Source: Gracilinanus agilis
Taxonomy: Eukaryota
NCBI RefSeq assembly: GCF_016433145.1
Contig: NC_058133.1
Location: 514,874,065-514,935,484, forward strand
DNA: 61,420 bases
Reading direction: 5' to 3'
A program made the translations under genes and the position numbers. This document shows, in pieces, positions 5,528 to 60,715 of the stretch (positions are counted from its first letter, which is position 1; every line of letters begins with the position of its first letter). Under the pieces are notes generated by a model. The model saw nothing but the letters and a program-made list of their open reading frames with translations. It was not told the origin of the DNA and did not search any database.

Positions 5528-5587
5528 ATGTAAATGAAGAACAGATTCTATTTCATTGTTTTTCACTTTCTTCCTTTGACTAATTTG
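5528..5587 (-). promoter_or_regulatory. Conserved TAS2R upstream module, copy A
   Basis: + strand ATGTAAAT(5528-5535)-gaagaacagattcta-TTTCATTG-N21-CTAATTTG, 310 bp upstream of ATG 5218. Conservation is seen directly; regulatory role is inferred. Confidence 0.7.
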
Positions 5588-5743
5588 TCTAAATAAGAAT
5601 AAAGCCAACAGCCTTCAACAAACAGACACAATGGAAAGTATAGAGGCTCAGGAGTCAGAGAACTTGGATCTTAAAACAGCTAATGTCTTCTGGTCTCCAA
5701 ATGTGCCAGAAAGACACTAAATTGCAAGACCCCTACTTTCCAC

Positions 5744-5746
<3 letters not shown>

Positions 5747-5795
<49 letters not shown>
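5747..5795. repeat. (CA)n microsatellite
   Basis: About 24 perfect CA units. Confidence 0.98.
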
Positions 5796-5797
<2 letters not shown>

Positions 5798-6560
5798 CTA
5801 CAATGATTTTTTTTGTGAAATGAACAGTTAAAAGAAGACAAGAACTCAATAAGGTTCAACATAAAAAAAATCTCTAAAAGAGACATTCTGCAGTTCCTCT
5901 AAATCCCCATCTTTGGCTGAATTGGCCAGGGATCTAATATCTCCACATCTCTCTCTGACCCTATTGATTTCTGTCTTTAGATAATTGTTTGCTTGAGAGA
6001 GTGTCAAGGATCACAGTATATTTCTCTGAAAAGGGCCTCTGAGGTCATCTGGTCAAAGTTGATCATTCTGATCCTCTATTTCCTTATCTCTAAGATGAAA
6101 AGATTGGACTTGATGGCTTCTGATATTCCTTCCAACTCAAAATTAATGATTCGATAAGCCTCATTTTACAATTGAGGGAAATGAGGTCTGAAGAGGTTGA
6201 AAGAGTTGTCTAAGCTCAAACAGTGACAGTAATGATGTGAACCCAGAGACTGTAACCTGAAGTCCAGAATTGTTTCCATCATATCAGGTGAAGTAAAGGA
6301 GAGTGACAAAGATAGAATTCACTGATGTTTCCATAAGTATCTCACATTCTAATTAAGCTTATGGTATATTTCTCTACGTCGGTAAGAAGAAAATTGGAAA
6401 GATGCTGAGAATCATCCACTTAGGGAGGGTCAGGAAAAGAGCTTTGGACTTATAGAATCCCCATCTACTTGTACCTGTGATGAATGGAAGAACCACAGTA
6501 AAGACGTTCTGGGACTCAGATGACTTCTTTCATTATGTAAGACACAGACAGGCCATAGCT

Positions 6561-7462
6561 CTAACTCTGTATCTTAGAGTTTCCCAGAGCCTTGAAAATA
6601 GCCCTAGATTTCCATAGGTCCCTCAGAGAGGCTGACCTCAACCTGTTATGCCCCAGTTGGCCATGACTTATATAATAAACAGCATGACCTTATTATTATT
6701 CAACAAAGAAAGAAGACTGAGAGTCCTGTAGTTATGGCCAAGTAGTAGATTTCAGAGAAGAGGAGGAAGTAGAGCACAGCTTTCATGGTCCCCCCACAGA
6801 TCTCCATGTGGGGCTTCTAGAACCTATGACTCTGGTCACCATTTTCTGAGTGTGTCTCCACATTGATAGGACTAGTGGAAAATGGGAGGACAGGGAGAGA
6901 GAAAAGAATAGAAACTCCTCTGCTCAATACATAAGAGAATCTAGATGAGAAAGTTTAGAGATATGCTGACTTAGAAGTTCTCCATCATATTTGTTGTCTT
7001 CTGGACCCAATGTTGGCATTGAAAATATCACTCTTACTCTCAATAGAAGGTAAAGGAGAAAGTATATGAGAGGGCAATTCATCAATACTCATTGACACTC
7101 TATGTTAATTACTTACAGATGGAGTGAGGGAAGTTCATGGTCCTTCAGGTTGGCAAAGATGCTGACAGAGAGGGCAAACTGGGCACTTGAGTGGTTTCAG
7201 AATCCAGATGACCTGCATGTATATTATTGTGTTGATGGCATAACCTTTGGATGAGACCACTCCTACAGTGGATTAGCATTATTGCCTAAATAGACCAAGT
7301 CTGAAAAAGGTCAGCTCAGTAAGGATGAAGTCCCCTTTGGACATGCTTCTGATCCTGACCCATTCTATACCATCAACCAATACAATTAAGCTACTGGCTA
7401 AAACCCTCACTAGAACCCTCCAGAAGCCATGGAACAAAACAGTTCTTGAGAGAATTTATCAT
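6561..7462 (-). pseudogene. TAS2R pseudogene (frameshifts, stops, deletion in TM7)
   Basis: Minus strand reads MINSLKNCFV..MASGGF..VRVLASSLIVLVDGIEWVRIRSMSKGDFILTELTFFRLGLFRQ*, then ..WRHTQKMVTRVIGSRSP.. and ..GHNRLRSASLRDLWK.. in broken frames. The YPLAHSIIL segment is missing. Confidence 0.9.
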
Positions 7463-7562
7463 GACTGAGGAGATGAGTCAGCTTTAAGATTGCTGCTGAT
7501 GAATGACTTTCTACCCAAAGTCTCTGCATCTTAATATGGTGGCAACCAAATTTTCTGTCTTT

Positions 7563-7762
7563 ATTTTTTTTTACCTTTACTTTCTGTCTTAGAATCAATA
7601 CAAGTATCAGTTCCAAGGTAGAAGAGCAGTATGGGTTAGGCAATTGGTGTTAAGTGATTGGCCCAAGGTTACATAGCTAGGAAGTGTCTGAGGCCAGATT
7701 TAAATCCAACTCCTCTCTAATCCAGGTCTGGTTCTCTATCCACTAAGCCACGTAGGTACCCC
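7563..7762 (-). mobile_element. SINE1_Mdo/MAR1-type CORE-SINE inserted between pseudogene ATG and its upstream module
   Basis: Antisense SINE body (gcccaaggttacatagctaggaagtgtctgaggccagatt) with a T-rich tail. Flanked by the near-direct repeat ccaaattttctgtc / ccaaatttttggtc. Confidence 0.85.
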
Positions 7763-7961
7763 AAATTTTTGGTCTTTAGAAAGGCCTCATCCTTCAACTA
7801 GGAAATACTCAGTTCTACAATGCAACGAGGCATCAGGTAGATTCTGGGAAATCACTGTTCAGCATTGTATGCTTCTCACCCAGTGATACAGTCCTCTCGT
7901 TATGATTCTTTGGAAATTTTTCACGTGATCTGACTAAGATAATGAGCTCTTGTTGGTGAAG

Positions 7962-8013
7962 ATATAACAAATGGACTGATTTTATTTCATTTTTCAGATG
8001 TTCTGAAAATTTG
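7962..8013 (-). promoter_or_regulatory. Degenerate TAS2R upstream module, copy B (octamer broken)
   Basis: gagctcttgttggtgaagATATAACAaatggactgattttatttcattt..aaaatttgcc aligns with copy I (tagctcttgtttgtaaagATGTAAATgatggatggatttcatttcattg). About 285 bp from ATG 7462 once the ~215-bp SINE is removed. Confidence 0.5.
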
Positions 8014-9603
8014 CCTAAGCAAAAGAAAAACAACAGTCCAAGACACAGAAAATACAGAGACAAAGATCTTAATATAAGGTTGTAGAACAGCAACCAATTT
8101 CAGAGGAAAGAATACTGGATATTTGGGTTTGAATCACAGCTCTGCCCAATACTGCTTGTGAGACCACACACAAATCATTCAGGTTCCCTGAACACAAATT
8201 ACACTGAATTAAATTTTCATAGTATCTCTGCTAATACTATCTTCGAAGGACAGCACGCTGTAATAATGATAATAATTTTCATTATTATTATTATATAAAG
8301 ATTTAATTTTTGCCAAGCATATTACATATGTAACCAAATTTGGACCTCTAAAAAGTCTCAGCTATCAGGTGCTATTTTTAATCCCCATTATAAAATTAAA
8401 AAGAATAAAACTAAGAGAAGTTATTTGGCCATGAACACATGGCTAGTATGTATCTTAGGTGGGATTCGAACTCAGATCTTGAGAACTCATCCAAAATTCT
8501 ATCCACTGTGCCACCTGAAGTGAATAGAGTGAAACTCTGAAAGGTGTGGCTTTCAATCTCACCTGTGATTCAGTAAGTGAATTCATTTTTCTCTTCCTCA
8601 ATTTATTTCTTTTCAAAACGAAGATGGTGTAATTCTTAGGTCCCTCACATCTCTAAATATGTGATCTTATGGCTGAAAGATGAATGGTTCTTAAAGACAA
8701 ACCAAAGGAGAGATCCTCTGTCCTTAATGTAGGACAGTCAGAAACTTGAAGGCCTAAATCCCTAGGAGTCAGATGTTCTAAAATGGCCAAGATTCTTGTC
8801 CTTTGCCCATTACCTCTCTCTACTTGTCTTTGAAATGGCCTATTGTGGGGTTCTGTAGTCTTGCTACTAGAGAAGAAGGCATTAATCCCCAGTAGAGTAC
8901 AAGGAAGCACAACATGGTGGCAAATCTGATTGAAGTGAGAAGAGGCCGGAAAAATAGATGATTCTAGCGGTTAGACCTTTGTGGAAAAGCTGTAGTTGCA
9001 TGGACACCAGAAACTAAGAAACCAAGGTCTATCTTGTTGGCAATCTCTATCCATAAGTTTTGAAGACCTTGCAAAAGCTAACACTAAACCATCCCAGGAC
9101 TTTGATTTAGAATTTGTTTCTTTCCTTAAGATGTTAGTGTACTTCCTCTACCAAAATCTCCTTACCTGCTTCATTGTGGTACAGAATTGAACCTGAGTTC
9201 TCAAAGGAAATTCCAAGAGATCAAAACCTCTGAATACCATCCCCAGCTGACCTACTGCTGGACCATGTACTTGTCAGTGAGAACCAGCACAAGTTCAGAG
9301 AAATTTACTATTAGGTTACCTACAAAGTAATTTTTTTTATTTTAAGTTTTTGACTACAAAATTTCCCAGTTACTATAGATTATTTCAGAGAGAGATCAGG
9401 AGAGAACTGACCAATGCTTACAAGTTCATAGGTTCTGGAGATATGAAAGAGAGAGGTAGCAATTTTTCCTTTTTCCTGCTTTTCATATTTTTCTTTTTAA
9501 ATTGTATTGATTTTTTTAAATGGTCAATATTAATTTCAGATAAATGAATTTATCTTAGAATCAAGAAAAACATTTTAGGAAATTTAGTCAAAAGAATACA
9601 CAA

Positions 9604-9803
9604 GGGAGCAGCTGGGTAGCTCAGAGGATTGAGAGCCAGGCCTAGAGATAGGAGGTCCTGGGTTTAAATCTGGCCTCAGACACTTCCCAGCTGTGTGACC
9701 CTGGGCAAGTCACTTGACCACCATTGCCCACCCTTACTACTCTCTGCTTTGGAGCCAATAAACAGTATTGACTCCAAGACAGGAGGTAAGGTTTTTAAAA
9801 AAA
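9604..9803 (+). mobile_element. SINE1_Mdo-like SINE, full length
   Basis: tRNA-like head gggagcagctgggtagctcag, CORE region and A tail. Near-identical to copies at 15306, 30886 and 52314. Confidence 0.92.
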
Positions 9804-9859
9804 TACACATGTAAGATAGTATCTGTCATGTTCCTCACCCATCATCCTCCAACTCTCTA

Positions 9860-11169: not shown

Positions 11170-11265
11170 AAAGATTTTATTTTTAATTTCTTTTTTCACT
11201 TAAATTTATCATTTCTCCTTTCCATCTGTTACAATCATTGAAAAGGGAAGAAAAAGAAAACCATA

Positions 11266-11321
<56 letters not shown>

Positions 11322-21826: not shown

Positions 21827-22765
21827 TCATATTCCAAAGAGTCTGCCAGATTTTCTGAGGTGGCATCTGAGTTTCCAAAACACCTTCAGTAAGGCCTGCC
21901 TCAGCTTGCTGTTCTCCAGGATCAGAATTATGGAATGGGCCAAAGGATAGATGGCCATGACTATCATTGCAAACATTACAGTCAGATTGTTGGCAAATAG
22001 AATTAAGCTTAAAACTCCTATGATGATCGCCACATGATATAGTGCAAAGAGGAAGAGGAAGGAGATTGTGAATTTTATGGCTTTCATATGGGCTTGTGTG
22101 CTTGGATCTCGGGAGTCTCTGAACTTGAGCTGCATCTTTTGGGTATGTCTCCATAGTGACAGGACTAGCAGGAAACAAGAAATCAGACATAGAATGAAAG
22201 GGAGGAGATTCCCCATATAAAAGAATATTGTAGAAAGTAAAAGCTCAGTGTTATCTATTTCAGTCATTTCAGATATATTTGCTTTATTTCTTTGATAAAA
22301 GAAAATTGGAGGTGTTTTTTCTGTCAGTGGCAGTAAAATGAGCAAAGAAATAATCAAGCACCCCATCAGCATCCTGATGACCAACTTGTAAACTCTCCAC
22401 TTCAGCCAAAGAAAGACAGGGTGGGAGAAGCTGGCGATTTTCAGAAACAAGAAGACGTTGAGGCAGGCATCAAACCAGGCACTTGACAAAGTAGATAGGT
22501 ACCATGGAAACTTCAAATATTTCAGTTTATTTTCAAGGTTATTCTTGAAATAGGAACCTAATAAAATAATTGTAGATGTTATTGTACACAGAAGAATGAT
22601 CCTGGATATGGCCAAGCCTGTGAGGATGAAGTCCAATGTGGATATTTTCCTGGTCTTAACCCAATTCATGTAGTTCACCAGTCCAATGAAGATGTTGACC
22701 AAAACTCCAATGGAGAATTCTCCAGATGCCACAGTGATACAAATGTTCTCCATGACAATTGCCAT
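21827..22765 (-). CDS. TAS2R: Bitter taste receptor type 2 (TAS2R), intact, 312 aa from first ATG
   Basis: The ORF-track start at 22780 is a TTG; the first ATG is at 22765 (MAIVMENI..). Signatures: LAISRI, FLFLKIASFSHPVFLWLKWR, LSLWRHTQKM, RDPSTQAH, YPLAHSIILILENSKLR. ECL2 sequon NIS. Confidence 0.96.
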   Translation of the reverse strand: MAIVMENICITVASGEFSIGVLVNIFIGLVNYMNWVKTRKISTLDFILTGLAISRIILLCTITSTIILLGSYFKNNLENKLKYLKFPWYLSTLSSAWFDACLNVFLFLKIASFSHPVFLWLKWRVYKLVIRMLMGCLIISLLILLPLTEKTPPIFFYQRNKANISEMTEIDNTELLLSTIFFYMGNLLPFILCLISCFLLVLSLWRHTQKMQLKFRDSRDPSTQAHMKAIKFTISFLFLFALYHVAIIIGVLSLILFANNLTVMFAMIVMAIYPLAHSIILILENSKLRQALLKVFWKLRCHLRKSGRLFGI

Positions 22766-23065
22766 GTCTACAGAGAACAAAATGCTAGCCCTTTAATATC
22801 ACTATTGGCAAGTGAATTTCTAATGATGGGGAAACATCTTACAATTTTGTCCTCCCACTTAATCATGGCTTTCTTTGTTGGTCAGAAGATGCCCAATATT
22901 GCTATGGGATGAAGCTACAATTATCATCAAAACAACAATCACTTTTCTTTTGATACAGCTCGCCTTAATTTTTTAGCTCTGACTCTGAGAATGTCCTCTC
23001 AACATGACTAGATGGTAAACTTCCAGAGCATTCCTGAGTGATGGGTGGAATTGTGATTTGTTTAG

Positions 23066-23124
23066 ATGTAAATGAAGCATAGCTTACATTTCATTGATTT
23101 GCCCTTTTTCTTTAGCCTAATTTG
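23066..23124 (-). promoter_or_regulatory. Conserved TAS2R upstream module, copy C
   Basis: ATGTAAAT(23066-23073)-gaagcatagcttaca-TTTCATTG-N20-CTAATTTG, 301 bp upstream of ATG 22765. Confidence 0.7.
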
Positions 23125-32383: not shown

Positions 32384-32668
32384 NNNNNNNNNNNNNNNNN
32401 NNNNNNNNNNNNNNNNNNNNNNNNNNNNNNNNNNNNNNNNNNNNNNNNNNNNNNNNNNNNNNNNNNNNNNNNNNNNNNNNNNNNNNNNNNNNNNNNNNNN
32501 NNNNNNNNNNNNNNNNNNNNNNNNNNNNNNNNNNNNNNNNNNNNNNNNNNNNNNNNNNNNNNNNNNNNNNNNNNNNNNNNNNNNNNNNNNNNNNNNNNNN
32601 NNNNNNNNNNNNNNNNNNNNNNNNNNNNNNNNNNNNNNNNNNNNNNNNNNNNNNNNNNNNNNNNNNNN
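32384..32668. other. Assembly gap (285 N)
   Basis: N run. ORF 32356-32679 is an artefact of it. Confidence 0.99.
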
Positions 32669-32779: not shown

Positions 32780-32839
32780 ATGTAAATGAAGAAGAGCTTC
32801 TATTTCATTGATTCTCACTTTCTATGGTAATCTAATTTG
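32780..32839 (-). promoter_or_regulatory. Conserved TAS2R upstream module, copy D (orphan, pointing into the gap)
   Basis: ATGTAAAT(32780-32787)-gaagaagagcttcta-TTTCATTG-N21-CTAATTTG, plus the proximal box ttagcctagactctga at 32690-32705. Confidence 0.7.
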
Positions 32840-36800: not shown

Positions 36801-38319
36801 TATCCATTCCCACCCATCCAATGTGAAGTGTCCGAAAAACTACAAAGTGTCAATTCCACTGAGCAGAAGAGTTTTGCATTTTCTCTTGATATAAGAATAA
36901 CAGAGGAACACATGTGAAATCTAATATTTGTCCCCTGCTCTTCCCATGTGAACAGTCTATTGTCTTTTTAGTCAACATACCCTTCTTTGTAATTGTTTGC
37001 TACTTGCTAAAGTCTACTTGGAGCTAGCAAATGTCTTTTTATTTCTCTCTGGGTCTTGTAATTCTTTAGAGACTACTGTTCCATTTCTTCCAGCCATTCA
37101 ACAATACTGATAGACAATTGCTATTAAATGATGAATGTGTTGGGGTGAATTTTGGAATCATTAAAGGAGCTTTTTTTAATTTTAAAAGACAATATCACCC
37201 TTTTTTCTCTTCCAGCTTCATTTTAAGCACATTTGATTGTTTGTTTCCTAGTTTCTCCTGAGAGGCCAAGCAAAAGCTTGTAAACCTATAAACAGTCAGC
37301 TTTTATTTCATTATTTTTAACTTTCTTCCTCAGCATAATTTATGTATGGAAGAGACATAGATTAGTGTAAGACAGAAATTATAGAAAAGGAAATAATGTC
37401 TGCAAACATCACTTTTTTGACCATCATATTCATTTAGATTTATTTTAGTCTAACGGATAGCACATTGAAATCATGGATCGGAATCTCTCTCAATAGATAT
37501 TCACTTATGTTCTGTGAACTATTGTTTCCTCAAGTGAAATTAATAAATTTTAATGAATTTATATTTCTGCTCTTATACCTTTTAATGAATGATCTTGTCC
37601 AATTTTGACATAGAAACCATGAACACATTGTCTAAGGAGAACTTTTAAAAGCATTGCTTTGCTCTCCTAAAAAGGTTTTGTTTAATAATCTTGTACATTT
37701 TGGGGGGATTAAACTTTTGACTTTAAATTGGTGCCTATACTGAGATGCTTAGATAAGGAAAGCTGCCAGAGGCACTGGAAGATTATGTCACATCTTTGGA
37801 CCTCATAACCAGGAGATGTTAAAGGCAGAATTAACACTCAGGTCTTTCTGACTCAGCCTCTTTACTCCACTGACTGCTTCTCCATTTCTCTCTGAATGAT
37901 GCTCATTTTTCATGTGCTGTGGCCTTCAGTGTTCAATGGCTTACAATCGTACAAGGCATGGTCCTTCATCTCAGGGAAAAGTTTCAGTTCCTTAAAGAGG
38001 CTTTGGAATTTTCCAAAGACAATCCAGCCCACCTTCCTCCTTCAATTTCAATTGAGGCCCAGTTCAATGTCCATTTATAATTTTTTTCATAATTAACAAA
38101 TAGTTGATAAGCTCTTTAGGGCATTTGTTTAAATGCATATCACAATCTAGACAATAAATGCAAAATATCTATTTTGTGGATGATTTATCCAAACTTTGGG
38201 TTCCATTGATCTTCAATATGACTAATAGAAGAACCCCATCAAATGCCAAATATCTTGTGATGGCTTCTCTCTTTCCACCAAAAAAAAGAATAGGTATATT
38301 TTCTAGAGTTCTGACTATG

Positions 38320-39221
38320 ACAGCAATAATTTCCCAGGGCTTTTGAGAAAGTCCAAGAGCTGTCATCACTTCCTCATGGAGGGAGGTATCACCTTGTTAT
38401 TCTTCAGGATAAGAGGAATGGAATGGGCCAAGTGGTAGATGGCCATGACCATCAAAGTAAACACTGCATCCGTCTTGTTATTAAATATGGAGGAGTTTCA
38501 TGTTCTTATGATAATTTCATGATGGTTCAGTACAAGGAAGAGGAAAGAGACAACTGATTTCATGGTCTTCAAGTGGACTTCTTTGTGGGGATTTCTAGAA
38601 CCTGAGAACATTATGGTGCAGCTGTTGGGTGTGCCTCTACTAGGAAAGGATTAACAGGAAACTTAGTCAAGGACAGGAAGAGACAACACTATCCATGTGG
38701 AAGAGGATGGTAGGGCGTGTGCTGTAATTATCTGATTCTTTTTATTTGTGTTTGTTTTGTTTTCTTGATGAGCTTTAAAACTATAATTATCACTTATTTT
38801 CTCCATAAGTGGAATCCCAATTAGCACAGATATGAGCAAGCAGTCCATCAGATCAGTTTCTTCCTTTAAGCCAAAGGAAGGTGCATTGGGAGAAGTTGGC
38901 AGTTTTTAGGAGGTAGAAAAAACCGGGTCAGGATGAAAACCAGCCACTTGAATCTCTGCTCAGGTACCAAATGGCATCCACATGTCTCATTTTTCCAGGG
39001 CTATGTCATTTAGGATCGAGTATGAAAAAGTTACTATACATACCTATACTAGATCAGTCTTAAAGATTGCCATGCCAGCAAAGATGAAGTCCAAAGTAGA
39101 CAATCTTCTTATCTTGACCCAGTCTATACAATTGATGGATCCATTGAAGTCATTGCCAAAATATACCCCTAAACTCTCTAGCTGCCTTAGCCATACAGAT
39201 GTTCTCCACTGTATTTGGCAT
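38320..39221 (-). pseudogene. TAS2R pseudogene (multiple frameshifts and stops)
   Basis: MPNTVENICMAKAAREFRGIFWQ* then, in shifted frames, SINCIDWVKIRRLSTLDFIFAGMAI.., YLLKTANFSQCTFLWLK, HTQQLHH..SRNPHKEVHLKTMKS and MVMAIYHLAHSIPLILKNNK. 3' boundary approximate. Confidence 0.92.
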
Positions 39222-39514
39222 GACTACAGAAAGAAAACTCAACTTTATTCTTATTATTTATAAATTTGTTTCCAGGCAAGGGGCAAAAACTATCTACCTC
39301 TTTAAATGACAATTTTCTTCTCCATCTTAATTCTAGCCACCCTTTTTGAGCAGGAACCCAAGCCTTGGACTGAATGATGTTACAACTATGTTGAAGACAA
39401 TCACCATTCTTCCTTTGATAACAGATCACTCTGGGAGTATAGTCCATATTGAGTGCATCCTTTCAGCATGATGGATGGTTCATTTTCATTGGTGCTTCTG
39501 ACTTAGAAGATGAG

Positions 39515-39569
39515 CTATAAATAGAGGGCAGCTTTGGTTTCATTTATTTCCCTTTTCAAGTCTAATTTG
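39515..39569 (-). promoter_or_regulatory. TAS2R upstream module, copy E (octamer broken)
   Basis: gatgagCTATAAATagagggcagctttggTTTCATTT..tCTAATTTGtcttgaaaa. The distal box is intact and the octamer is altered. About 294 bp upstream of ATG 39221. Confidence 0.6.
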
Positions 39570-40564
39570 TCTTGAAAACTGAGTTAGTAAAAATCTAGAA
39601 CATGGAGAATGTGCAAAAATGAAGGTGGAGATGGAGCAGCATCATTTCACTAACTATCCTCTTAACTGATATGCATCCTGTTCTGCTGGAAAAAGGACAC
39701 AGGCTTGAGACATTTAATAGATGTGTGACCCGGGAAAAAAGTCAGTTCATCTCTCTGTCTTTAATGCCTTAGCTAATACTAGTGCTCAGACTTCAGTGAG
39801 CTTAATCTTTCTCTCTTGTTATCTTTTGAGGAGTTTTATCTAATTTTAGCATAGGAGAAAGATATTTAAAAGTATAAAATCTCAAAGGTGATGTTTACCC
39901 CTCTGAATAAGAAACTTCTAAATAGTCATGCACATAGTTAAAAATTCCTAGATTGAATCAGATTGCCTAGGAAGACATGACTTTGGGGGTATTATAATTA
40001 TTATCAGCATTATTGTGAGCTTGACAGACATTAGGAAACTACATTTTCATATACAAAGAATAGAAAAAGAGAGTTATATCTGACAGTATGAATTTTTATT
40101 ATATACAGATGATATGTCTAGAGTATATCTAGTAAATGTAATATGATAGTTCCAATATTGATCTTCTTGTCTGTGTCTCCTTTTTAACTGCCTTCACTGC
40201 CTTCATTGTCTTCTCTGAATTAAAAAAAAATCGACTCTCCTTTTTTTAATAGAATACCTATAACTATCACTCTATGAACTCCCCACCCAAAGAAAAGTAC
40301 CCTCTTGTAAAATATAAATATAGTTGAACAAAACTAATGTGTCTGAAATAAAAAGTTCAATTTGTACCCAAATATTTTTGCTGGTCTTTGATGTATACAA
40401 TTAGTCATTCATTTTGTTTTCCTATGTAAATAGTCAAACATAGTGAGATTCAATGATAACTAATGGGCCTTGAAAGGCTTTTCAAGAATTCAGAACTGAC
40501 TTCTCTTCCTACAGAAGAAGGGAGTTATTCCAAGGTTTATTACACAAAACCTTGACCAGATCCC

Positions 40565-41500
40565 TTAGAAGCAGTGTTTAAGCTGCCATACAATGCTCAG
40601 GAAGGCCTGCCTAAGTTTGTTATTCTCCTTGATTAAAATGATAGAATGGGCCAAGGGGTAGGTGGCAGCTATTAACATTGATAAAAACACAGCTGGAGTA
40701 CTTTCAAAAAACACATAGCTCACATTTGCCATGATGATGCCCAAATGGTATAGTAAATAGAGGAAGAGGAAAGACACCATGGATTTCATGGTTTTCTTAT
40801 GCACCTCTGTGCTGACGTTTCTGGAGGCTGTGATCTGCTGGGTATGCCTCCACAGGGAGAAGACTAACAAAAAGCAGGAGATAATGGACACACCGAAGGG
40901 AAAAAATCCCTCCATGTGGTAGAAAATCAAAAAGAAAAAAAATATTTGTTTATGGCTTTTATTTATCTGCATCTTATGAGTTCCATTTGCTTTATTTTTA
41001 TACTCAGCAAGGATTTTATATATCTCATTTATTTTCTCTGTCATTGGAAGATTGATAAGCAAGGAAATGAGGAAGCTGATAACCATCATACCAAGAACCA
41101 CCTTGTTAATCCTCCACTTCAGCCAGAGAAAGGCAGGATGGGAAAAGGTGGTGATCTTCAGGAAGTAGAAGATGCTGAGGCAGGTACCAAACCAGGAACT
41201 TACATGGTTGCTCAAGTTCCAAAGATGTTCTAGGTAGCTTGGATTACCATCGGCATATAAATCTAAATAAGAATTCATTATGATTATAGATGTGAATGAC
41301 CCCATGAAAATGATCCTAGAGACAGCCAAGACAGTGAGGATTAAGTCTATTGAATACACTCTTCGAGTCTTGACCCAGTCTATGAAGTTGACCAGTCCAA
41401 TGAAGCCATTGGCCAACCCTCCTACTAGAAACTCTGCAGCTGCCAGCATCACACAGATTTTCTTAATGGGACCTTGAATGTCTGTAGAAGACAAATACAT
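40565..41500 (-). CDS. TAS2R: Bitter taste receptor type 2 (TAS2R), open ORF, 311 aa; ancestral ATG mutated to ATT
   Basis: GGLANGFIG, LAVSRI, FYFLKITTFSHPAFLWLKWR, FSLWRHTQQ, YPLAHSIILIKENNKLR; ECL2 sequons NGT and NKS. The family start position (41479) reads ATT, and an in-frame ATG 7 codons upstream opens the frame. Confidence 0.93.
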   Translation of the reverse strand: MYLSSTDIQGPIKKICVMLAAAEFLVGGLANGFIGLVNFIDWVKTRRVYSIDLILTVLAVSRIIFMGSFTSIIIMNSYLDLYADGNPSYLEHLWNLSNHVSSWFGTCLSIFYFLKITTFSHPAFLWLKWRINKVVLGMMVISFLISLLINLPMTEKINEIYKILAEYKNKANGTHKMQINKSHKQIFFFFLIFYHMEGFFPFGVSIISCFLLVFSLWRHTQQITASRNVSTEVHKKTMKSMVSFLFLYLLYHLGIIMANVSYVFFESTPAVFLSMLIAATYPLAHSIILIKENNKLRQAFLSIVWQLKHCF

Positions 41501-41762: not shown

Positions 41763-41822
41763 ATGTAAATGAAGGACAGCTTCTATTTCACTGCTTTTAC
41801 CATTCTTCTTTAGCCTAATTTG
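41763..41822 (-). promoter_or_regulatory. Conserved TAS2R upstream module, copy F
   Basis: ATGTAAAT(41763-41770)-gaaggacagcttcta-TTTCACTG-N21-CTAATTTG, 263 bp from ATG 41500 and 284 bp from the ancestral start position. Confidence 0.7.
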
Positions 41823-47685: not shown

Positions 47686-48071
47686 CATAGCCCAATAATA
47701 TTTTGAGGTCCATGTTGTTAATTGTCCACTTCAGCCAAAGAAAGATATGGTGAGAAAAACTGATGTCTTCAGGAAATAGAAGATTAATTTAGGCAGGTAG
47801 CAAAATAGGCACTTGATTCATTTTTCAGTTACTAGATAATCTCCAGATGTCTCAGTTTACCAGTATTATATAATTTAGGAGAGAATAATATATATTTGCC
47901 ATTAGTGACCACAACAAAACAATCCTGGAGATGGCCAAACCAGTTGGGATGCTCTTCTAATCTTAACCCATTGGGTATAGTTCACCAGTCCAATCAACTC
48001 ATTAACCAAAACTCAACTAATAACTCTCCAGTAGCCATAGTTACATATGTGTTGTCCATGGTGCTTGGCAT
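47686..48071 (-). pseudogene. TAS2R pseudogene, 5' part only (~390 bp)
   Basis: MPSTMDNTYVTMATGELLV, then a frameshift to VLVNELIGLVNYTQWVKIRR, TGLAISRIVLLWSLM, and FSHHIFLWLKWTINNMDLKILLGY, then L1. The C-terminal part was not found in the window. Confidence 0.9.
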
Positions 48072-48379
48072 GCCTGCAACAAAAATCGTTGATGTTTATA
48101 GTACTGCTGGTTCATGGATTTCTAGTCAAGGTGAACAGCATGATGTGCCTATTGAAAAACATTACTTTTCTGCATAATTGTGATTTTCCTCTGTGGCCAG
48201 AAATTCCCAAGCCCTTCTATGGGATCAGGCTGCCACTGTCTTCATAAAAACACTCCTTCTTCTTGCAAACATTTCAAAGCAGTGATTTGAGCTCAGACCC
48301 TGAATATGCCCTTTCAGCATTGTCAGCTGTTAAATGTCCATGAGTACCCCTGACTGAGAGGCTGACATTGTTTGTGAGG

Positions 48380-48436
48380 ATGCAAATGAAGGCCAGCCTA
48401 TTTCATTACTTTGACCCTTCTTCCTTAGCTATTTTT
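48380..48436 (-). promoter_or_regulatory. TAS2R upstream module, copy G, with canonical octamer ATGCAAAT
   Basis: ATGCAAAT(48380-48387)-gaaggccagccta-TTTCATTA. The spacer is 13 rather than 15 bp and the distal CTAATTTG box is degraded. 309 bp upstream of ATG 48071. Confidence 0.6.
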
Positions 48437-48614: not shown

Positions 48615-48650
<36 letters not shown>

Positions 48651-48672
48651 TACTTGGGACACTCAGTTATAT
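48615..48672. repeat. (TA)n tract followed by a 32-bp unit repeated after the gap
   Basis: catatacacatacttgggacactcagttatat at 48641-48672 is identical to 49073-49104. Confidence 0.9.
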
Positions 48673-49072
48673 NNNNNNNNNNNNNNNNNNNNNNNNNNNN
48701 NNNNNNNNNNNNNNNNNNNNNNNNNNNNNNNNNNNNNNNNNNNNNNNNNNNNNNNNNNNNNNNNNNNNNNNNNNNNNNNNNNNNNNNNNNNNNNNNNNNN
48801 NNNNNNNNNNNNNNNNNNNNNNNNNNNNNNNNNNNNNNNNNNNNNNNNNNNNNNNNNNNNNNNNNNNNNNNNNNNNNNNNNNNNNNNNNNNNNNNNNNNN
48901 NNNNNNNNNNNNNNNNNNNNNNNNNNNNNNNNNNNNNNNNNNNNNNNNNNNNNNNNNNNNNNNNNNNNNNNNNNNNNNNNNNNNNNNNNNNNNNNNNNNN
49001 NNNNNNNNNNNNNNNNNNNNNNNNNNNNNNNNNNNNNNNNNNNNNNNNNNNNNNNNNNNNNNNNNNNNNNNN
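48673..49072. other. Assembly gap (400 N)
   Basis: N run. The five ORF-track ORFs spanning it are artefacts. Confidence 0.99.
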
Positions 49073-50884
49073 CATATACACATACTTGGGACACTCAGTT
49101 ATATATATATATGTATATATATAGTTATATATAATTCTATATATAGTTATACATAAATAACTGGGCCCTTGTGGTCAATAGAAAGGTTACTTGTGGAACA
49201 TGGAGTTTTTCAGACCTTGCTGCTCAAGTACCTGTAGCATTACACTATTACTCATTGGATGTTTGAAAAAAAACAATGTTTATGAATTGGTTATCAAATT
49301 GTTCAACCTACATCATTCTTTATAATAATTAATATGAAAATGAACTTTTCTATGCGCATTAAAAGTTCTGGCATTCAGATCAAAATCATTGTCATTTCTA
49401 TTTTTAAAGTCTTTGTCTTATTTTACATTGCTATTTTAATTTACTCAGAACAACTGAAATGGGTAAAATGATCTGCCTATGTTCATATAACTAGTGTTTT
49501 AGCTGAGATTTAAATTCATATCTTTCTGACTCCAGGTCTAGTTATCCATTATGCAAAACTATTTCTTAAATAATTAAGAAAATGAGCAAAGAAGCTAAAT
49601 TATGTTTATTTTTTATTTTTATTTTTGGAAATTTTTATTTAATTAATTAATTTAGAATATTTCCCCATAGTTACAAGATTCCTGTTCTTCCCTCATCCTT
49701 CCCTCTTCCCCTAAATTATGTTTTAAGACATGATAGATTACTAATATATAAATATATGTGTGTATGCTATATACATATGTACATGCAAAACATACAGATA
49801 TATTCTCTTAACAAAAAGGGTATAGATGATAAACCATACAAATTAAAAGCAATCTAAATAATCTTCAGGGACTGTTAGAGATTTCATGATGAGTTTTTCA
49901 GACAAAGAAAGATAAGTAGAAAAGAAATGAAATATTTGAACAGCATAATTTAAAAATTATATATGATAAACTATTTCTTTTTCAGCAATATCCAACATTT
50001 AGGCAAAGACTGACCCCAAGCTAGGATATGAAGAACACATAATTAATACCAAAAAGCAGCAATAGAAAACATAACCTTTTGAGAACCAAATTCATATATC
50101 CTGTGATCTCATTGAAGTAAGTGTTTCTTCCCTTGATGTGGGGATACAGCCCATCCCTACATATCCATCTTGTTGTATAGAACACTTGTTCACATTCTCT
50201 CCTAAGTACTTGAGATCTTTCTTGGCATCACAAAGATATCAGTAGAATATAGAGGAAATCAATTTCTTGTTTCTCACCTGTGTTTGGACCATTTTATTTT
50301 TCTGGCATACACTTCTTAGGTGATAGCCTTTATTTCAGTTCTTCGCATTGCTTTATTTGTTATTTTGACAATTTGCTTTCAATCAGTCTTTCTCTTCATT
50401 GCCCTTCTCTTCAATGAGACGTTCTCTTTTAATTCTTCCAAGACCATGACATTCTACAGTTCACAGAATTTAAAAGACAGTTGTAGATAGTTCATATTTA
50501 AAAATTGCCCTTTGTTTTAGGGAGATATTTGGGATCATTAAAAGCAATTTGTAATTTCTCTAAGGTAATCCAGTTTAATTTTTGAATTCAATTTAAAGCA
50601 AGGTTTAATGATTTTTCCCATATGAAATGTCTGTCAGAGATTCATATATGCCAGTGAACAAGCCTTATAGGCTGACCATCTAATTTCATGCTATTATTTG
50701 AATAAAAGGTAGTCTTAATCCACTTCTTTGTTTCCTGTATAAATAATTAAACCAAACTTTGTATTTCAATGTTTTCTAATTATAATGAATAGAATAATAA
50801 CCTTAAAAAAACATTCTTCAAGAACTCAACCATGGCATCTTTACTACCATACCCCTCTCTGAAAAATGCAAGAATTCTTAAAGT

Positions 50885-51853
50885 TTAGGCTCTGCCACTT
50901 AGACTTTCCCAGGGACTTTGAGGCAGTTTCCCCAGTGCCCTCCGAAAGGCCTGTCTCAGCTTGCTGTGGCCCAGTATTAGGATGATGGAGTGGGTCATGG
51001 GATAGACATTCATGACTATCACTGAAAGTATGGCAAGAAGTTTACAATGACATATAGATAAGCTTAAGACTCCCATGGTGATGCCCAAATGGTATACTAC
51101 AAAAACAAAGAGGAAAGAGATTATGCATTTCATGGCCCTCACATGGGCCTCTGTGTTGGGATCCCTGGAGCCTATGACTGTGAGATGCATCTTCTGTGTA
51201 TGCCTCCACAAGGACAGTACTAACAGGAAACAGGAGATGAAAGATAGAGCAAAGGGGACCAAACCCCCAGTATTTAAGAGAATCAAGGCAGAAAATTTTA
51301 GGGTTTTCAATCTTTGGACATTATGACTCATATTTATTTTATTTTCCTGATCACTGGGAATCAATTGTATCTTAGTGATTCTCTCCATCGTTGGAAGGAT
51401 AATGATCAAGGATATGGGTAAGCACCCCATCAGCATCCTGAGGACCACCTTGTTAATTCTCCACTTCAACCAAAGAAAGGCAGGGTGGGAGAAATTTGCA
51501 ATCTTCAGAAAGTAGAAGATACTGAGGCAAGTTCCAAACCAGGCACTTGAATGGTTGCTAATGTTCCAAATAACTTCTGAAAGAATCCAATTATTAGTGT
51601 AATCTCTCTTAACATAGATAAAAACAAAAATGGTCATTGTCATTAGTGCCCACAATGTACCAATCCTGGAGATGGCCAAGCCAGTAAGGATGAAATCAAC
51701 TGGGGTTACTCTTCTGGTCTTCACCCACTCAATACAGTTTACCAATCCAATGAAGCCATTGGTGAAAACTCCCACTAGGAATTGTCCAAAGGCCACAATC
51801 ACACAGATGTTCTCGAGTACACTTGGCATATTTATGAAGAGAAATTCCTTCAT
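50885..51853 (-). CDS. TAS2R: Bitter taste receptor type 2 (TAS2R), intact, 322 aa (314 aa from family-consensus ATG 51829)
   Basis: MPSVLENI, GVFTNGFIG, LAISRI, FYFLKIANFSHPAFLWLKWR, LSLWRHTQKM, RDPNTEAH, YPMTHSIILILGHSKLR. ECL2 sequon NMS. Confidence 0.96.
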   Translation of the reverse strand: MKEFLFINMPSVLENICVIVAFGQFLVGVFTNGFIGLVNCIEWVKTRRVTPVDFILTGLAISRIGTLWALMTMTIFVFIYVKRDYTNNWILSEVIWNISNHSSAWFGTCLSIFYFLKIANFSHPAFLWLKWRINKVVLRMLMGCLPISLIIILPTMERITKIQLIPSDQENKINMSHNVQRLKTLKFSALILLNTGGLVPFALSFISCFLLVLSLWRHTQKMHLTVIGSRDPNTEAHVRAMKCIISFLFVFVVYHLGITMGVLSLSICHCKLLAILSVIVMNVYPMTHSIILILGHSKLRQAFRRALGKLPQSPWESLSGRA

Positions 51854-52146: not shown

Positions 52147-52205
52147 ATGTAAATGAAGGACAGATTCTATTTCACTGTTTTGCACTTTTAACTCAACCTA
52201 ATTTG
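52147..52205 (-). promoter_or_regulatory. Conserved TAS2R upstream module, copy H
   Basis: ATGTAAAT(52147-52154)-gaaggacagattcta-TTTCACTG-N20-CTAATTTG, 318 bp from ATG 51829. Confidence 0.7.
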
Positions 52206-52313
52206 TCTACATTAAAGAAATCAACTAAAGTATCTATCAGAGAGAATGTAGAAAAATATAGGGATAGAATATTTATCAACTTTCTGACAATTATCTTTCC
52301 TAAAATGCAGTGA

Positions 52314-52532
52314 GAGGGGCAGCTGGGTAGCTCAGTGGATTGAGAGCCAGGACTAGAGACAGGAGGTCCTGAGTTCAAATCTGACTTCAGACACTTCCTC
52401 GCTATGTGACCCTGGGCACAGCCTAGCCCTTACCACTCTTCTTCCTTGGAACCAATACACAGTATTAATTCTAAGATGGAAGTTAAGGGTTTGTTTAAAA
52501 TAAAATAAAATAAAATAAAATAAATAAAAAAA
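52314..52532 (+). mobile_element. SINE1_Mdo-like SINE with (TAAAA)n tail and 13-bp TSD
   Basis: TSD taaaatgcagtga at 52301-52313 and 52533-52545. Confidence 0.93.
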
Positions 52533-57579: not shown

Positions 57580-58625
57580 TGTTTGACTTTTTGGATATAA
57601 AAAAGAGAGTGAGAGGTCAAGAAGGGATCCAGGTTTGGAAGTCTAGTAGATTGTAAGTGCATTCGAATCCTTGTCAGAAACCAGGAATTTTAGAGTCGTG
57701 AAAGTTTTTTGAGGGGAATACAATGAATCTGTTTGAGATATGCAAAGATTAAATTATCTATTGGACATCAAATTAGAAATTTCCAGAAGACAGCAATGTG
57801 AGACAATAGTCCAGGACATGGATTTCAGCTTGAAACATAAATTTGAGACTTCCCTAAAGAGATGATCATTTAAATGAGTCTCTTCCTCTTCTCTCAATTT
57901 AAAGAAAATAAGGATAATCATGGTTTTTGTTTTGCTTACTTGACCCTTTTGAGTCTTATTTTCTTCTAGATTAATATAGATTCTAGCACCATCATTCATA
58001 TTTTCTGTCATGAAATAGATGAACAATTGATCCCATCAAAATAAGGGCAGAGCCTTGGTGGATGATCATATAGAGTGGTCATAATAGAGTGATCATCCAG
58101 TAATAAATACTGAGGAAAGAAAAGTCAGATTCTTAAGAAGAGAGCCAAGAGAGAATAATGTCATGAAAACCAAGGATGAGAGGATAGCCCACAGGAGTAT
58201 GTATGATTTAGTGTATCAGAAGGTTTAGTGAGGTCAAAATGAATGAAGCCTGAGAAAAAGGCATTGATGTTAGTGGTTATGGGAACACTGGTGGCCCTGG
58301 AGAGAGCAGTCCAATCAAGAAGCACTTATTTGGGGGCACCTAGGTTGCTCAGAGGTTAGAGAGCTTGGCCTGGTGATAGGAGGTCCTGGGTTCAAATCTG
58401 AATTCAGACACTTTCTAGCTGTGTGACCCTGAGCAAGACACTTAACTCCCTTTGTCTAGCTAGACTCTAGCTCTTACTGTTCTTCTGCCTTAGAACCAAT
58501 ACACAGTATTGATTCTAAGAAGGAAAGGATTTAAAAAAAATCATTAATGCTTACTATGTGGCAAACCCTGGAAAACAAATTAAAAGCAAAAGGAGTTCTT
58601 GCCTTCAAGGAGTTTATATTCCAAA
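57580..58625 (-). mobile_element. L2 fragments, antisense, interrupted by a SINE
   Basis: gagaataatgtcatgaaaaccaagg..gaggtcaaaatgaatgaagcctgagaaaaaggcattg and the terminal aatgcttactatgtg..ttgccttcaaggagttt. Confidence 0.65.
58332..58540 (+). mobile_element. SINE1_Mdo/MAR1-like SINE
   Basis: Head gggggcacctaggttgctcag, CORE region and A tail. Confidence 0.88.
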
Positions 58626-59548
58626 ATATTTCAGTTAATTGGTGGAGTCAGAAGTCATATTTCTAGAAACTGAGGAATTAGTAGGAGGTAGGGAAGTGGA
58701 GGCAAGGAAGAGCCTTTCAACAGCCTGATATCCAGAAGTAAATGTTCATTCCTCAAGTATGACATTGTATTGAGTTCAGACATTCTAATGCCTCCACTTC
58801 TCTTAAACTTTATCAAATATTTACTCAGGCCTGTGGGTATGTTGGGTCTGGGGGTGCAAGAAGGATGAAAAGGAGCAAGACATGTTTGCTTCCACAAACA
58901 CAAACAGTACATACATGCCTACATTTCAACCAATAAATTACCATTTATTAAATGTCTTCTATGTTCCAGATCCTGTTCTAGGCACTGATTTTATCCATTT
59001 GTGATATGAAGAGTTAATTTTAAAAAAAGGAAAGTCATAAGGACTTTTTTAAAGAATGAGAAGGAAAATCAATGTAAAAAAAAAAAAAGACAGTGGCATC
59101 ATGGTAGTCAACCTTTTGGCCCTCTTAGGCTTCATCTATCATAATGTGTATCACTGTGTCTATTTTTTTCTCCCTTTAAAAGCTTATTGGTGCAAAGTCT
59201 CTAGGGCCTGTGGTCATGGGCAATGATATAGAAGCTGATCCATGAATACCTTTTTCCTGTCTCCATGAGTAACTCATATTGTACTTAAGTTGATGCAGGA
59301 TCTTCCTATGGGCACCAGCCCTTAAAGGATAGAAGACCTCATGGTCAGAAGAACTGGCAATCAATCACCTTTTTACATGACTTTCTATTGCTTTGGTGCC
59401 TGATATTTAATAAACATTTCTTTCATAGATAGTACTCAATAATTTGAAATAATAATGAATAGAAGAGTCTTAGAAAAGTGTTTCAAGACTCAGCTGGCTT
59501 CTTTCCTCCTGGAAGAGGCAAGATTCAGAACATATCTGTTTCCAGAAT

Positions 59549-60507
59549 TCAGTTTCTCAGAGCATTTGAAGCAATTCTTGTGACCTCAGAGAGGTTTACC
59601 TTAGCTTCCTGGGTTCCAAGATTAGAATGATGGAATAGTACAAGGGGTAGAAGTTCAAGACCATCAAAGAAAATACCCTTAACAGATTATCCTCCACTAA
59701 AGAAAACACTAATTCTCTTATGATAGAGGTTGTGAAAAACAAATAGGAAGAGGAAGGATATCAGAGATTTCCTAGCCTTCACATGGGCTTCACCACTGGG
59801 GTCTTTGAAGTCTGTGACATTGATCTTTATCTGTTGGATGTTCCTCCCCAGGAAGATTAGCAGATAACAGGTAATCAGGGACAGATCAAAAGGGAAAACT
59901 CCCACATGTACACAACTATGCAGGCACACATGTGTACATACATAACTCCCTATTGAAAAGAATCAAGATGGAAAAATGTTGGTCTTAACTTCCTGGGACC
60001 TTCTGGGTCATGTTTTTTTTCTTTCTTCTAGATCAATATGGATTGTGGAATTGTTTGCTTTCCCTTCCATTGAAAGATCAATGAACAAGTTGATGAACAA
60101 TCAACCCAGTAGCATCCTAAAAATCCCCTTGATAATTCTCTCTAGCTAAGGAAAGCCAGGGTGAAAGGAGATTCTAATCTTTAGAAAGTAGAAACTTCTA
60201 GAGGAAGTGGAAAACCAGACCCTCATATGATTACTTAAGTCCCATGAGGCCTCCAAATACCTCAGTTTAGCAAGGACATAACATCCAGGATTGAACACAA
60301 TTACAAAAAAAGCCTACTGTTAGTGTTCATCACTAGTTTTCACCACCTAGAGATGACCAAGTCACTGAGAAAGAAATCCCCAGTGAACATTCTTTTGGTC
60401 TTCCAATTTATGCAGTTCACCAAAACAATGGAGCCAATGGTCAAAGACCTCCCTAAGAACTCTCTAGCAGTCATAGTCACATAGATGTTCTCCATCATAC
60501 TTGGCAT
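59549..60507 (-). pseudogene. TAS2R pseudogene (stops, frameshifts, 47-bp insertion in TM5)
   Basis: MPSMMENIYVTMTAREFLGRSLTIGSIVLVNCINW..GDFFLSDLVISRW*, later GVFPFDLSLITCYLLIFLGRNIQQIKINVTDFKDPSGEAHVKARKSLISFLFLF and a degenerate YPLYYSIILILEPRKLR. Confidence 0.92.
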
Positions 60508-60655
60508 GTCTAAGGAGAGAAAACATAGCATAATTCAGGACAACTACACCAAACCACCAACTAATGATTTTTAACACAGACTCTGCTTTTATCTTCTCAT
60601 CATTACCAGGAAGTAATTTTCCACTTTCTCTCATGGTTAGCTCTTGTTTGTAAAG

Positions 60656-60715
60656 ATGTAAATGATGGATGGATTTCATTTCATTGCTTTACACTTTCTT
60701 CCTCTGTCTAATTTG
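60656..60715 (-). promoter_or_regulatory. Conserved TAS2R upstream module, copy I
   Basis: ATGTAAAT(60656-60663)-gatggatggatttca-TTTCATTG-N21-CTAATTTG. It is only 149 bp from ATG 60507, implying a ~150-bp deletion in between. Confidence 0.65.

What the first reader, a model, noticed from the sequence alone, without database searches (positions are those of the whole stretch)
5528..60715. A fixed-geometry, octamer-containing module upstream of every TAS2R: candidate bitter-receptor promoter code (POU2F3/Skn-1a)
Seen: nine copies of a ~60-bp element, + strand ATGTAAAT-N15-TTTCAYTG-N20/21-CTAATTTG, at 5528, 7962, 23066, 32780, 39515, 41763, 48380, 52147 and 60656. It lies 263-318 bp upstream of the ATG in intact genes. 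The octamer-like core, the 15-bp spacer and CTAATTTG are invariant in all four intact genes, while the proteins and spacer bases differ visibly. Copy G carries the canonical octamer ATGCAAAT at the same position. Established: ATGCAAAT is the POU-domain octamer; POU2F3 (Skn-1a) specifies sweet/umami/bitter taste cells and tuft cells and acts with the OCA-T coactivators; TAAT cores are homeodomain sites; olfactory receptor promoters use an analogous homeodomain + O/E pair. Inference: this is a shared POU + homeodomain (possibly SOX; CATTGTT in copy A) cis-regulatory module for TAS2R co-expression. I cannot verify whether it has been described.
Basis: partly seen in the sequence, partly recalled or inferred. 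Interest (0 to 1): 0.85.

Follow-up and report, generated by a model that had tools for sequence, protein, structure and literature searches.

The report
Conserved octamer promoter module of bitter-receptor genes
Every bitter-taste receptor gene in this opossum cluster has the same ~60-base control element about 300 bases before its start codon, and its core, the classic "octamer" ATTTGCAT/ATTTACAT, sits at the same place in koala, Tasmanian devil, horse, jackal, deer mouse and gecko genes, so it is probably an ancient promoter switch that the searchable literature does not describe.

Summary
Six of the nine copies match the full pattern exactly (0 expected). Three are decayed copies beside old pseudogenes, and I found a tenth relic.

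All genes lie on the minus strand. In gene sense the module reads CAAATTAG-N20/21-CARTGAAA-N15-ATTTACAT, then 263-318 nt to the ATG.

The four intact paralogs are only 43-52% identical in protein, and 23% of their third codon positions are invariant. In the module 40 of 60 columns are invariant (Fisher 2e-10), so it is under purifying selection.

The octamer recurs in gene-sense orientation outside the window:
- 250-330 nt upstream of TAS2R genes in koala, devil, horse, jackal and Peromyscus;
- as one-mismatch variants in tenrec and squirrel;
- as an invariant GATTTGCATCT 130-170 nt upstream in gecko, followed by a TATA-like box.

Only the octamer is universal. The spacings and the CAAATTAG box are clade-specific, and the SOX idea fails.

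The best reading is a proximal promoter octamer read by a POU class-2 factor, plausibly POU2F3 with OCA-T. Binding and the transcription start were not tested.

I found no paper describing it, and a 2020 review reports that earlier in-silico work found no enriched sites.

The earlier scan note on gap 1 (s1-154069) fits: module D is intact-like, but its coding sequence is not in the assembly.

The parts
5528..5587 (-). Module A, exact; octamer 310 nt upstream of the ATG of intact gene A
4283..5218 (-). Intact TAS2R gene A (311 aa)
7948..8017 (-). Module B, decayed (17 of 48 constrained columns changed); pseudogene pieces at 6588-7428
23066..23124 (-). Module C, exact; 301 nt upstream of ATG 22765
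21827..22765 (-). Intact TAS2R gene C
32780..32839 (-). Module D, exact and intact-like (2 of 48 changes); its coding sequence is not in the assembly (gap 32384-32668 follows)
37297..37342 (-). Tenth module relic: boxes 3 and 2 recognisable, octamer lost, no coding remnant
39513..39577 (-). Module E, decayed (13 of 48); pseudogene at 38372-39239
41763..41822 (-). Module F, exact; 263 nt upstream of ATG 41500
40565..41500 (-). Intact TAS2R gene F (311 aa)
48369..48429 (-). Module G, decayed (10 of 48) but with the canonical octamer ATGCAAAT at 48380; pseudogene at 47690-48086
52147..52205 (-). Module H, exact; 318 nt upstream of annotated ATG 51829
50885..51829 (-). Intact TAS2R gene H (314 aa from the annotated start; the ORF runs to 51853)
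60656..60715 (-). Module I, exact (2 of 48 changes); young pseudogene at 59530-60522
32384..32668 (.). Assembly gap 1; the two sides are not shown to be continuous and there is no TAS2R homology on the far side
48673..49072 (.). Assembly gap 2, in a TA-rich repeat with an identical 32 nt on both edges; outside module G

Best explanation
The module is the conserved proximal promoter of TAS2R bitter-receptor genes.

**Core element.** Its core is a gene-sense ATTTGCAT/ATTTACAT octamer, usually followed by CT. It was inherited from the common ancestor of amniote TAS2R genes and has been kept by purifying selection in each functional paralog. It decays once a gene dies.

**Most likely mechanism (inferred, not shown).**
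- A POU class-2 factor binds the octamer just upstream of the transcription start. In taste type II cells and tuft cells that factor would be POU2F3 (Skn-1a) with its OCA-T coactivators.
- This switches on every TAS2R gene in the cells that hold that factor, much as the octamer with Oct-2/OCA-B drives immunoglobulin V-gene promoters in B cells.
- The marsupial-specific boxes may be auxiliary POU or homeodomain sites that tune this. CARTGAAAT resembles TAATGARAT, and RGNCAAATTAG is an inverted octamer-like or ATTA site.

**Shown here:** existence, constraint, orientation, position and deep conservation.

**Inferred:** the binding protein, the position of the transcription start and the cell specificity.
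For: **Constraint among paralogs**
- The four intact paralogs are 43-52% identical in protein. Pairwise identity is 0.46-0.58 at third codon positions and 0.47-0.63 at four-fold sites.
- The 60 module columns have mean pairwise identity 0.795. That compares with 0.42 just upstream, about 0.52 downstream, and at most 0.46 in the best window of shuffled controls.
- Four-way invariant columns: module 40/60, codon position 3 69/297, four-fold sites 6/28, codon position 2 168/297. Fisher test against position 3: 2e-10.

**Decay with gene death**
- At the 48 columns invariant in intact genes, the old pseudogenes' modules have 17, 13 and 10 changes. The young pseudogene I has 2, and D has 2.

**Orthologs**
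- In the three-way footprint of gene H, koala and devil, conservation peaks at 0.97 over the octamer and its flanks. Four-fold sites are at 48/73.

**Other species**
- ATTTRCAT lies on the sense strand 50-450 nt upstream in 14 of 19 TAS2R genes, against 0.05 expected per gene. Outside the window it is 10 of 15 (binomial 2e-10, not corrected for shared ancestry).
- The four other eutherian genes have a 7/8 variant at the homologous place.
- In an unbiased 8-mer count, ATTTGCAT and TTTGCATC are shared by the most genes (9; shuffle maximum 6).
- All 16 ATTTRCATCT matches in the nine loci are on the gene-sense strand.

**Gecko**
- GATTTGCATCT is the only long invariant block among five paralogous promoters. 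A TATA-like box follows 11 nt later.
- Eutherian TAS2R7 orthologs have an invariant TATA-like CTAAATTAAC 22 nt after the octamer.

**Literature**
- Tas2r expression is lost in Skn-1a/Pou2f3 knockouts in many tissues (PMC5720759).
- POU motifs are enriched in open chromatin of type II taste cells, and Tas2r loci are open only there (PMC10239704).
- OCA-T recruitment needs adenine at octamer position 5, which all variants here keep (PMC12755459).
Against: - No binding, chromatin or expression data exist for these sequences.
- The transcription start is not mapped.
- The window's own octamer is a 7/8 variant (C4 to T). Its affinity for POU2F3 is not known to me.
- The same site would be bound by ubiquitous POU2F1, so the octamer alone cannot explain taste-cell specificity, nor the difference between bitter and sweet cells.
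- The authors of PMC10239704 read their data as POU2F3 acting perhaps as a repressor.
- Marsupial copies have no TATA box after the octamer.
- Acceptor-like sequences just before some ATGs leave room for a start further upstream.
- One echidna gene lacks the sense-strand octamer.
- Paralogs and orthologs are not independent samples, so the binomial P values overstate the evidence.
Confidence: 0.6

Rival explanations
1. The element is a constrained promoter element, but the protein that matters is not POU2F3. It could be ubiquitous POU2F1/Oct-1 giving basal promoter activity, or a non-POU factor that reads overlapping bases. Candidates are a homeodomain on ATTA, a C/EBP-like factor on GTGCAAA, or an IRF-like factor on GAAANNGAA. 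Cell specificity would then come from distal enhancers.
For: - The octamer is bound by all class-2 POU proteins (established knowledge).
- The didelphid form ATTTACAT departs from the consensus.
- Conservation in marsupials covers about 12 nt, CTTCATTTACAT, plus CT, which is more than the octamer.
- Type II cell-selective intergenic ATAC peaks in mouse Tas2r clusters suggest enhancers (PMC10239704).
- Elf3, Klf4 and Fezf2 ChIP peaks are reported at the Tas2r138 start site in thymic epithelium (PMC10901246).
Against: - The one thing shared by gecko, marsupial and eutherian copies is exactly the octamer plus CT. The flanking candidate sites are not shared.
- Tolerated variation is confined to single octamer positions, and adenine 5 is always kept.
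Confidence: 0.25
2. The module is transcribed and works at the RNA level as a 5'-UTR structure, a small upstream reading frame or a splicing signal. Alternatively it lies in an intron of a transcript that starts further upstream.
For: - A weakly conserved TATA-like block (TCTATATTCT type) lies 40-70 nt upstream of CAAATTAG.
- Pyrimidine-rich AG acceptor-like sequences sit directly before the ATG in several copies and in tenrec.
- Box 2 holds ATGAAATAG in some copies.
- Contigs of a related species cover the region beyond the module, but these look like DNA.
Against: - RNAalifold finds no consensus structure at all in ten aligned modules: 0 pairs.
- The mini reading frame is not conserved. Genes F and H have GTG, and gene C reads through.
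- No conserved GT donor lies between the module and the ATG.
- In gecko the octamer is followed by a TATA-like box, as in a promoter.
- The conserved core is a classic DNA-binding site.
Confidence: 0.1
3. The copies are alike only because the genes are tandem duplicates or exchange sequence by gene conversion, with no function.
For: - The genes are tandem paralogs on one strand.
- The whole 5' region is still weakly alignable.
Against: - The module is far more conserved than synonymous sites of the same paralogs, and identity falls to 0.42-0.52 within a few bases on either side.
- It decays in old pseudogenes.
- It is kept in lineages separated since the marsupial-eutherian and mammal-reptile splits.
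Confidence: 0.02

Closest known systems
Octamer element of immunoglobulin V-gene promoters (also histone H2B and snRNA promoters), read by Oct-1/Oct-2 with OCA-B
   Same: - An ATGCAAAT/ATTTGCAT octamer is kept in the proximal promoter of every member of a large tandem gene family.
- It has a fixed orientation relative to the gene. In gecko and eutherian TAS2R7 it lies a short distance upstream of a TATA-like box.
- Cell specificity is thought to come from a lineage-restricted POU factor plus an OCA coactivator that needs adenine 5 (PMC12755459 for the OCA-T parallel; the Ig facts are from established knowledge).
   Different: - It is a different gene family and cell type.
- The transcription start is unmapped, so the -70-type position is not shown.
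- Didelphid copies use ATGTAAAT, and marsupial copies lack a TATA box.
POU2F3/OCA-T1/2 target sites in tuft cells and tuft-like lung cancer
   Same: - Both use the octamer with adenine at position 5.
- TAS2R genes are expressed in POU2F3-dependent cells and are lost in Pou2f3 knockouts (PMC5720759).
   Different: - The papers I could read report no TAS2R promoter among described POU2F3 targets.
- Occupancy here is untested.
Family-wide promoter motifs of other chemoreceptor genes: olfactory receptor O/E plus homeodomain sites, and conserved V1R promoters (PMC3247230, PMC1955453)
   Same: - Short conserved promoter blocks are shared by many paralogs of a clustered chemosensory receptor family.
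- They are far better conserved than the surrounding non-coding DNA.
   Different: - The motif is different (octamer rather than O/E).
- TAS2Rs are co-expressed in groups rather than one per cell.
- Conservation here reaches across amniotes, not just within subfamilies.

Membership tests
POU-domain octamer site | 8-nt match to ATGCAAAT (either strand) | tested here: met
   - Exact in window copy G, devil (2), horse (2), jackal (2), Peromyscus and gecko (5).
- 7/8 (ATGTAAAT) in the six exact window copies and in koala.
- 7/8 in tenrec, squirrel, horse_2 and jackal_2.
POU2F3/OCA-T-competent octamer | Adenine at octamer position 5, required for OCA-T recruitment (PMC12755459) | tested here: met
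   Every variant seen keeps A5: ATGCAAAT, ATGTAAAT, ATACAAAT and AGGCAAAT.
POU2F3/OCA-T-competent octamer | Occupancy by POU2F3 in taste or tuft cells, and loss of activity on mutation | not testable with these tools
   No ChIP, CUT&RUN or reporter data are reachable. The literature search found none for TAS2R promoters.
Ig/H2B-type octamer promoter | Octamer within about 100 nt upstream of the transcription start, with a TATA box between | tested here: inconclusive
   - A TATA-like box lies 11 nt after the octamer in gecko and 22 nt after it in eutherian TAS2R7.
- There is none in marsupial copies.
- No start site is mapped.
Constrained cis-regulatory element (phylogenetic footprint) | Conservation significantly above synonymous or flanking divergence of the same genes | tested here: met
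   - 40/60 invariant columns against 69/297 third positions, Fisher 2e-10.
- Pairwise identity 0.795 against 0.42-0.52 in the flanks.
   - It holds in the six exact window copies. Devil has N19/N15.
- One koala ortholog has lost two boxes.
- Eutherian spacing from box 2 to the octamer is 12-14 nt.
- Gecko has only the octamer.
Structured RNA element | Conserved base-paired structure with covariation | tested here: not met
   RNAalifold on 10 modules gives 0 predicted pairs.

The most novel reading that the evidence does not exclude
The sense-strand octamer is the ancestral promoter element of amniote TAS2R genes. POU2F3 with OCA-T reads it directly. The bitter-receptor repertoire would then be a second large multigene family, besides immunoglobulin V genes, whose members are all wired to one lineage-specific POU/OCA pair through a promoter octamer kept for more than 300 million years. 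The clade-specific extra boxes would decide which subset of receptors a given cell expresses.
Probability: 0.4. Interest if true: 0.8.

Novelty: new member of a known kind. Interest (0 to 1): 0.7.

Why it matters
How bitter-receptor genes are transcriptionally controlled is described in the field's own papers as poorly understood (PMC10239704). A 2025 review of the receptors says nothing about promoters (PMC12703716). Earlier in-silico work is reported to have found no enriched binding site in human or rodent TAS2R proximal promoters (PMC7225360, citing Foster et al. 2015).

A single short element, conserved in position and orientation from gecko to opossum to horse, gives a direct and testable link between the master regulator of taste and tuft cells (POU2F3) and the receptor genes themselves.

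It would also help in three practical ways:
- annotating TAS2R promoters;
- telling live genes from dead ones, since the module decays with the gene;
- designing minimal promoters for bitter or tuft cell reporters.

Tried and rejected
- **RNA evidence for the transcription start.**
  - The only RNA-labelled runs holding the region come from a relative about 92% identical. Coverage is flat over the coding sequence, both flanks and beyond the module, which looks like DNA.
No start site was obtained.
- **Monodelphis and a second Gracilinanus locus.** Three look-ups returned no DNA because the file was too large. Other TAS2R clades of the same genome could not be tested.
- **RNA structure rival.** No consensus structure was found.
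- **Upstream reading frame in box 2.** It is not conserved.
- **SOX site.** The WWCAAWG core is present in only 3 of the 6 exact copies, so I rejected it as a shared feature.
- **Splice donor between the module and the ATG.** None is conserved.
- **Neutral relic or gene conversion.** Rejected.
- **Gap 1.** I looked for TAS2R homology or paralogous 3' flank on the far side and found none.
- **Literature.** Ten searches found no description of an octamer in TAS2R promoters. Subscription journals are not covered, so prior description cannot be excluded.
Full report
**What is in the window**

The window is marsupial. Its proteins sit on a 523-Mb contig shared with proteins named Gracilinanus agilis, and the best outside match to gene H is a Monodelphis TAS2R at 85%.

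It holds a tandem TAS2R cluster, all on the minus strand:
- four intact genes: A 4283-5218, C 21827-22765, F 40565-41500, H 50885-51829;
- four pseudogenes: B, E, G, I.

In gene sense it reads CAAATTAG - N20/21 - CARTGAAA - N15 - ATTTACAT, then 263-318 nt to the ATG.

**Check of the observation**

The full pattern matches exactly six times, at 5528, 23066, 32780, 41763, 52147 and 60656. None is expected in shuffles.

A profile made from the six exact copies finds them and also a tenth relic at 37297-37342. Copy G carries the canonical ATGCAAAT.

**The gaps, tested first**

- **Gap 1 (32384-32668).** It begins about 110 nt downstream of module D.
  - The other side has no TAS2R homology and matches only SINEs. 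A gene would need at least 1.1 kb where 285 N are written.
  - The two sides are therefore not shown to be continuous. Either the gap is under-sized, as scan note s1-154069 proposed, or the gene is gone.
  - Module D is intact-like, which favours a live or recently live gene.
- **Gap 2 (48673-49072).** It lies in a TA-rich repeat 285 nt upstream of module G and has the same 32 nt on both edges. It does not affect the finding.

I did not try to fill either gap.

**Is it more than shared ancestry?**

The four intact paralogs are old. Protein identity is 43-52%. Pairwise identity is 0.46-0.58 at third codon positions and 0.47-0.63 at four-fold sites.

| Region or site class | Mean pairwise identity | Four-way invariant |
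|---|---|---|
| Module, 60 columns | 0.795 | 40/60 |
| 100 columns just upstream | 0.42 | - |
| 200 columns downstream | about 0.52 | - |
| Shuffled controls, whole alignment | 0.24 | - |
| Shuffled controls, best 60-column window | at most 0.46 | - |
| Codon position 3 | - | 69/297 |
| Four-fold sites | - | 6/28 |
| Codon position 2 | - | 168/297 |

The Fisher test of the module against third positions gives 2e-10. The module is thus kept as well as, or better than, second codon positions.

At the 48 columns invariant in the intact genes, the modules of the three old pseudogenes have 17, 13 and 10 changes. The young pseudogene I and copy D have 2 each. Constraint follows gene function.

**Beyond the window**

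I fetched flanks of TAS2R genes from other species through exact-protein look-ups.

- **Orthologs of gene H.** Koala and Tasmanian devil carry the module at the same place.
  - The three-way footprint starts about 110 nt upstream of CAAATTAG and peaks at 0.97 over the octamer and its flanks. Four-fold sites are at 48/73.
  - Devil has the canonical ATTTGCAT. One koala ortholog has lost the other two boxes.
- **Eutherians.** ATTTGCATCT or ATTTGCATCC lies 252-310 nt upstream of the ATG in two horse genes, two jackal genes and Peromyscus TAS2R7.
  - It is preceded 12-13 nt upstream by CAWGRAAW.
  - The remaining horse, jackal, tenrec (TAS2R19-like) and squirrel (TAS2R1) genes have a 7/8 variant at the homologous place.
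- **Gecko.** Three genes (43-63% identical to one another, about 30% to gene H) and two relic promoters all carry GATTTGCATCT.
  - In the three genes it lies 132-169 nt upstream of the ATG.
  - It is the only long invariant block in their alignment and is followed 11 nt later by a TATA-like box.
- **Echidna.** The one gene sampled shows no sense-strand octamer.

Two counts summarise this:
- An unbiased 8-mer count over 19 genes puts ATTTGCAT and TTTGCATC first by number of genes. ATTTRCAT is present in 14 of 19 upstream windows against 0.05 expected per gene.
- All 16 ATTTRCATCT matches in the nine loci are on the gene-sense strand.

These P values ignore shared ancestry. The stronger argument is that the octamer survives where everything around it has diverged.

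**What is universal and what is not**

- Only the octamer, usually followed by CT, is shared by all clades.
- The N15 spacing and the CAAATTAG box are marsupial features.
  - Horse TAS2R7 has CAAATTAG at another distance.
  - Its eutherian orthologs keep only an ATTA core there.
- The SOX core is in 3 of the 6 exact copies.
- Read as sequence, box 2 (CAATGAAAT) resembles the TAATGARAT POU site. Box 3 in copies C and F (AGGCAAAT) is a 7/8 inverted octamer, the same variant that replaces the main octamer in horse_2 and squirrel. The marsupial module may therefore be a cluster of POU-type sites. This is my inference from consensus strings, not a test.

**How it most likely works**

I read it as a proximal promoter whose octamer recruits a class-2 POU factor shortly upstream of the start site. 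In taste type II and tuft cells that factor would be POU2F3 with OCA-T1/2. This mirrors the octamer/OCA-B logic of immunoglobulin promoters.

Support from papers:
- Tas2r transcripts vanish in Skn-1a/Pou2f3 knockouts in many tissues (PMC5720759).
- Tas2r loci are open only in type II cells, and POU motifs are enriched in those cells' peaks (PMC10239704).
- OCA-T recruitment needs adenine 5 of the octamer, which every variant here keeps. Position 4, the one that varies in marsupials, is contacted only through water (PMC12755459).

Not shown: binding, start site and activity. No usable RNA data could be obtained.

**Rivals**

- Another reader of the same bases, either Oct-1 alone or a non-POU factor: about 0.25.
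- A transcribed or intronic element: about 0.1. This is weakened by the absence of any consensus RNA structure and of a conserved donor or upstream reading frame.
- A neutral relic: about 0.02.

**Novelty**

Ten full-text searches found no paper linking TAS2R promoters to an octamer.
- A 2020 review states that earlier in-silico analysis found no enriched transcription-factor sites in human or rodent TAS2R proximal promoters (PMC7225360).
- A 2025 review of bitter receptors does not discuss promoters.
- Subscription journals are not covered, so I cannot exclude an earlier description.

The element type is classic. Its role as a family-wide, amniote-deep TAS2R promoter element appears new, so I file it as a new member of a known kind.

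Noticed in passing
window 37297-37342 (- strand): A tenth, decayed module relic. Boxes 3 and 2 are recognisable, the octamer is lost, and no coding remnant lies downstream. It is probably the promoter of a deleted or fully eroded TAS2R.
   Followed up: partly
window 22766-22785 (gene C); likewise just before the ATG of F, E and G; L007 9975-10000: A pyrimidine-rich stretch ending in AG lies directly before the start codon and looks like a 3' splice acceptor. No conserved GT donor lies between the module and the ATG, so the 5' exon structure of these genes is unresolved.
   Followed up: partly
L003, L004, L005, about 470 nt upstream of the TAS2R7 ATG: Eutherian TAS2R7 orthologs share a palindromic ATTTGAAATTCAAAT about 170 nt upstream of the octamer. 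As I remember it, this is one base off the PORE POU-dimer site. They also share an invariant TATA-like CTAAATTAAC 22 nt after the octamer.
   Followed up: no
L008 8050-8060, 14475-14485, 16720-16730, 19620-19630: Four of the five gecko TAS2R promoters (not g2) share TGATACCT about 30-40 nt before the octamer. It resembles a SIX-family site (from memory). Gecko g2 has a forward ATGCAAAT about 80 nt upstream of the sense-strand octamer.
   Followed up: no
L003 11292-11301; L005 11316: ATTTRCATC on the gene strand lies about 350 nt after the stop codon of TAS2R7 in horse and jackal. It may be the promoter of a lost downstream paralog.
   Followed up: no
window 52296-52400: A very high-copy SINE lies immediately upstream of the conserved promoter block of gene H. 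Word depth in the read runs is in the millions. It marks the upstream limit of orthologous conservation.
   Followed up: partly
window 48641-48672 and 49073-49104: An identical 32 nt stands on both edges of assembly gap 2. The gap may be two contig ends overlapping in a TA-rich repeat rather than missing sequence.
   Followed up: partly
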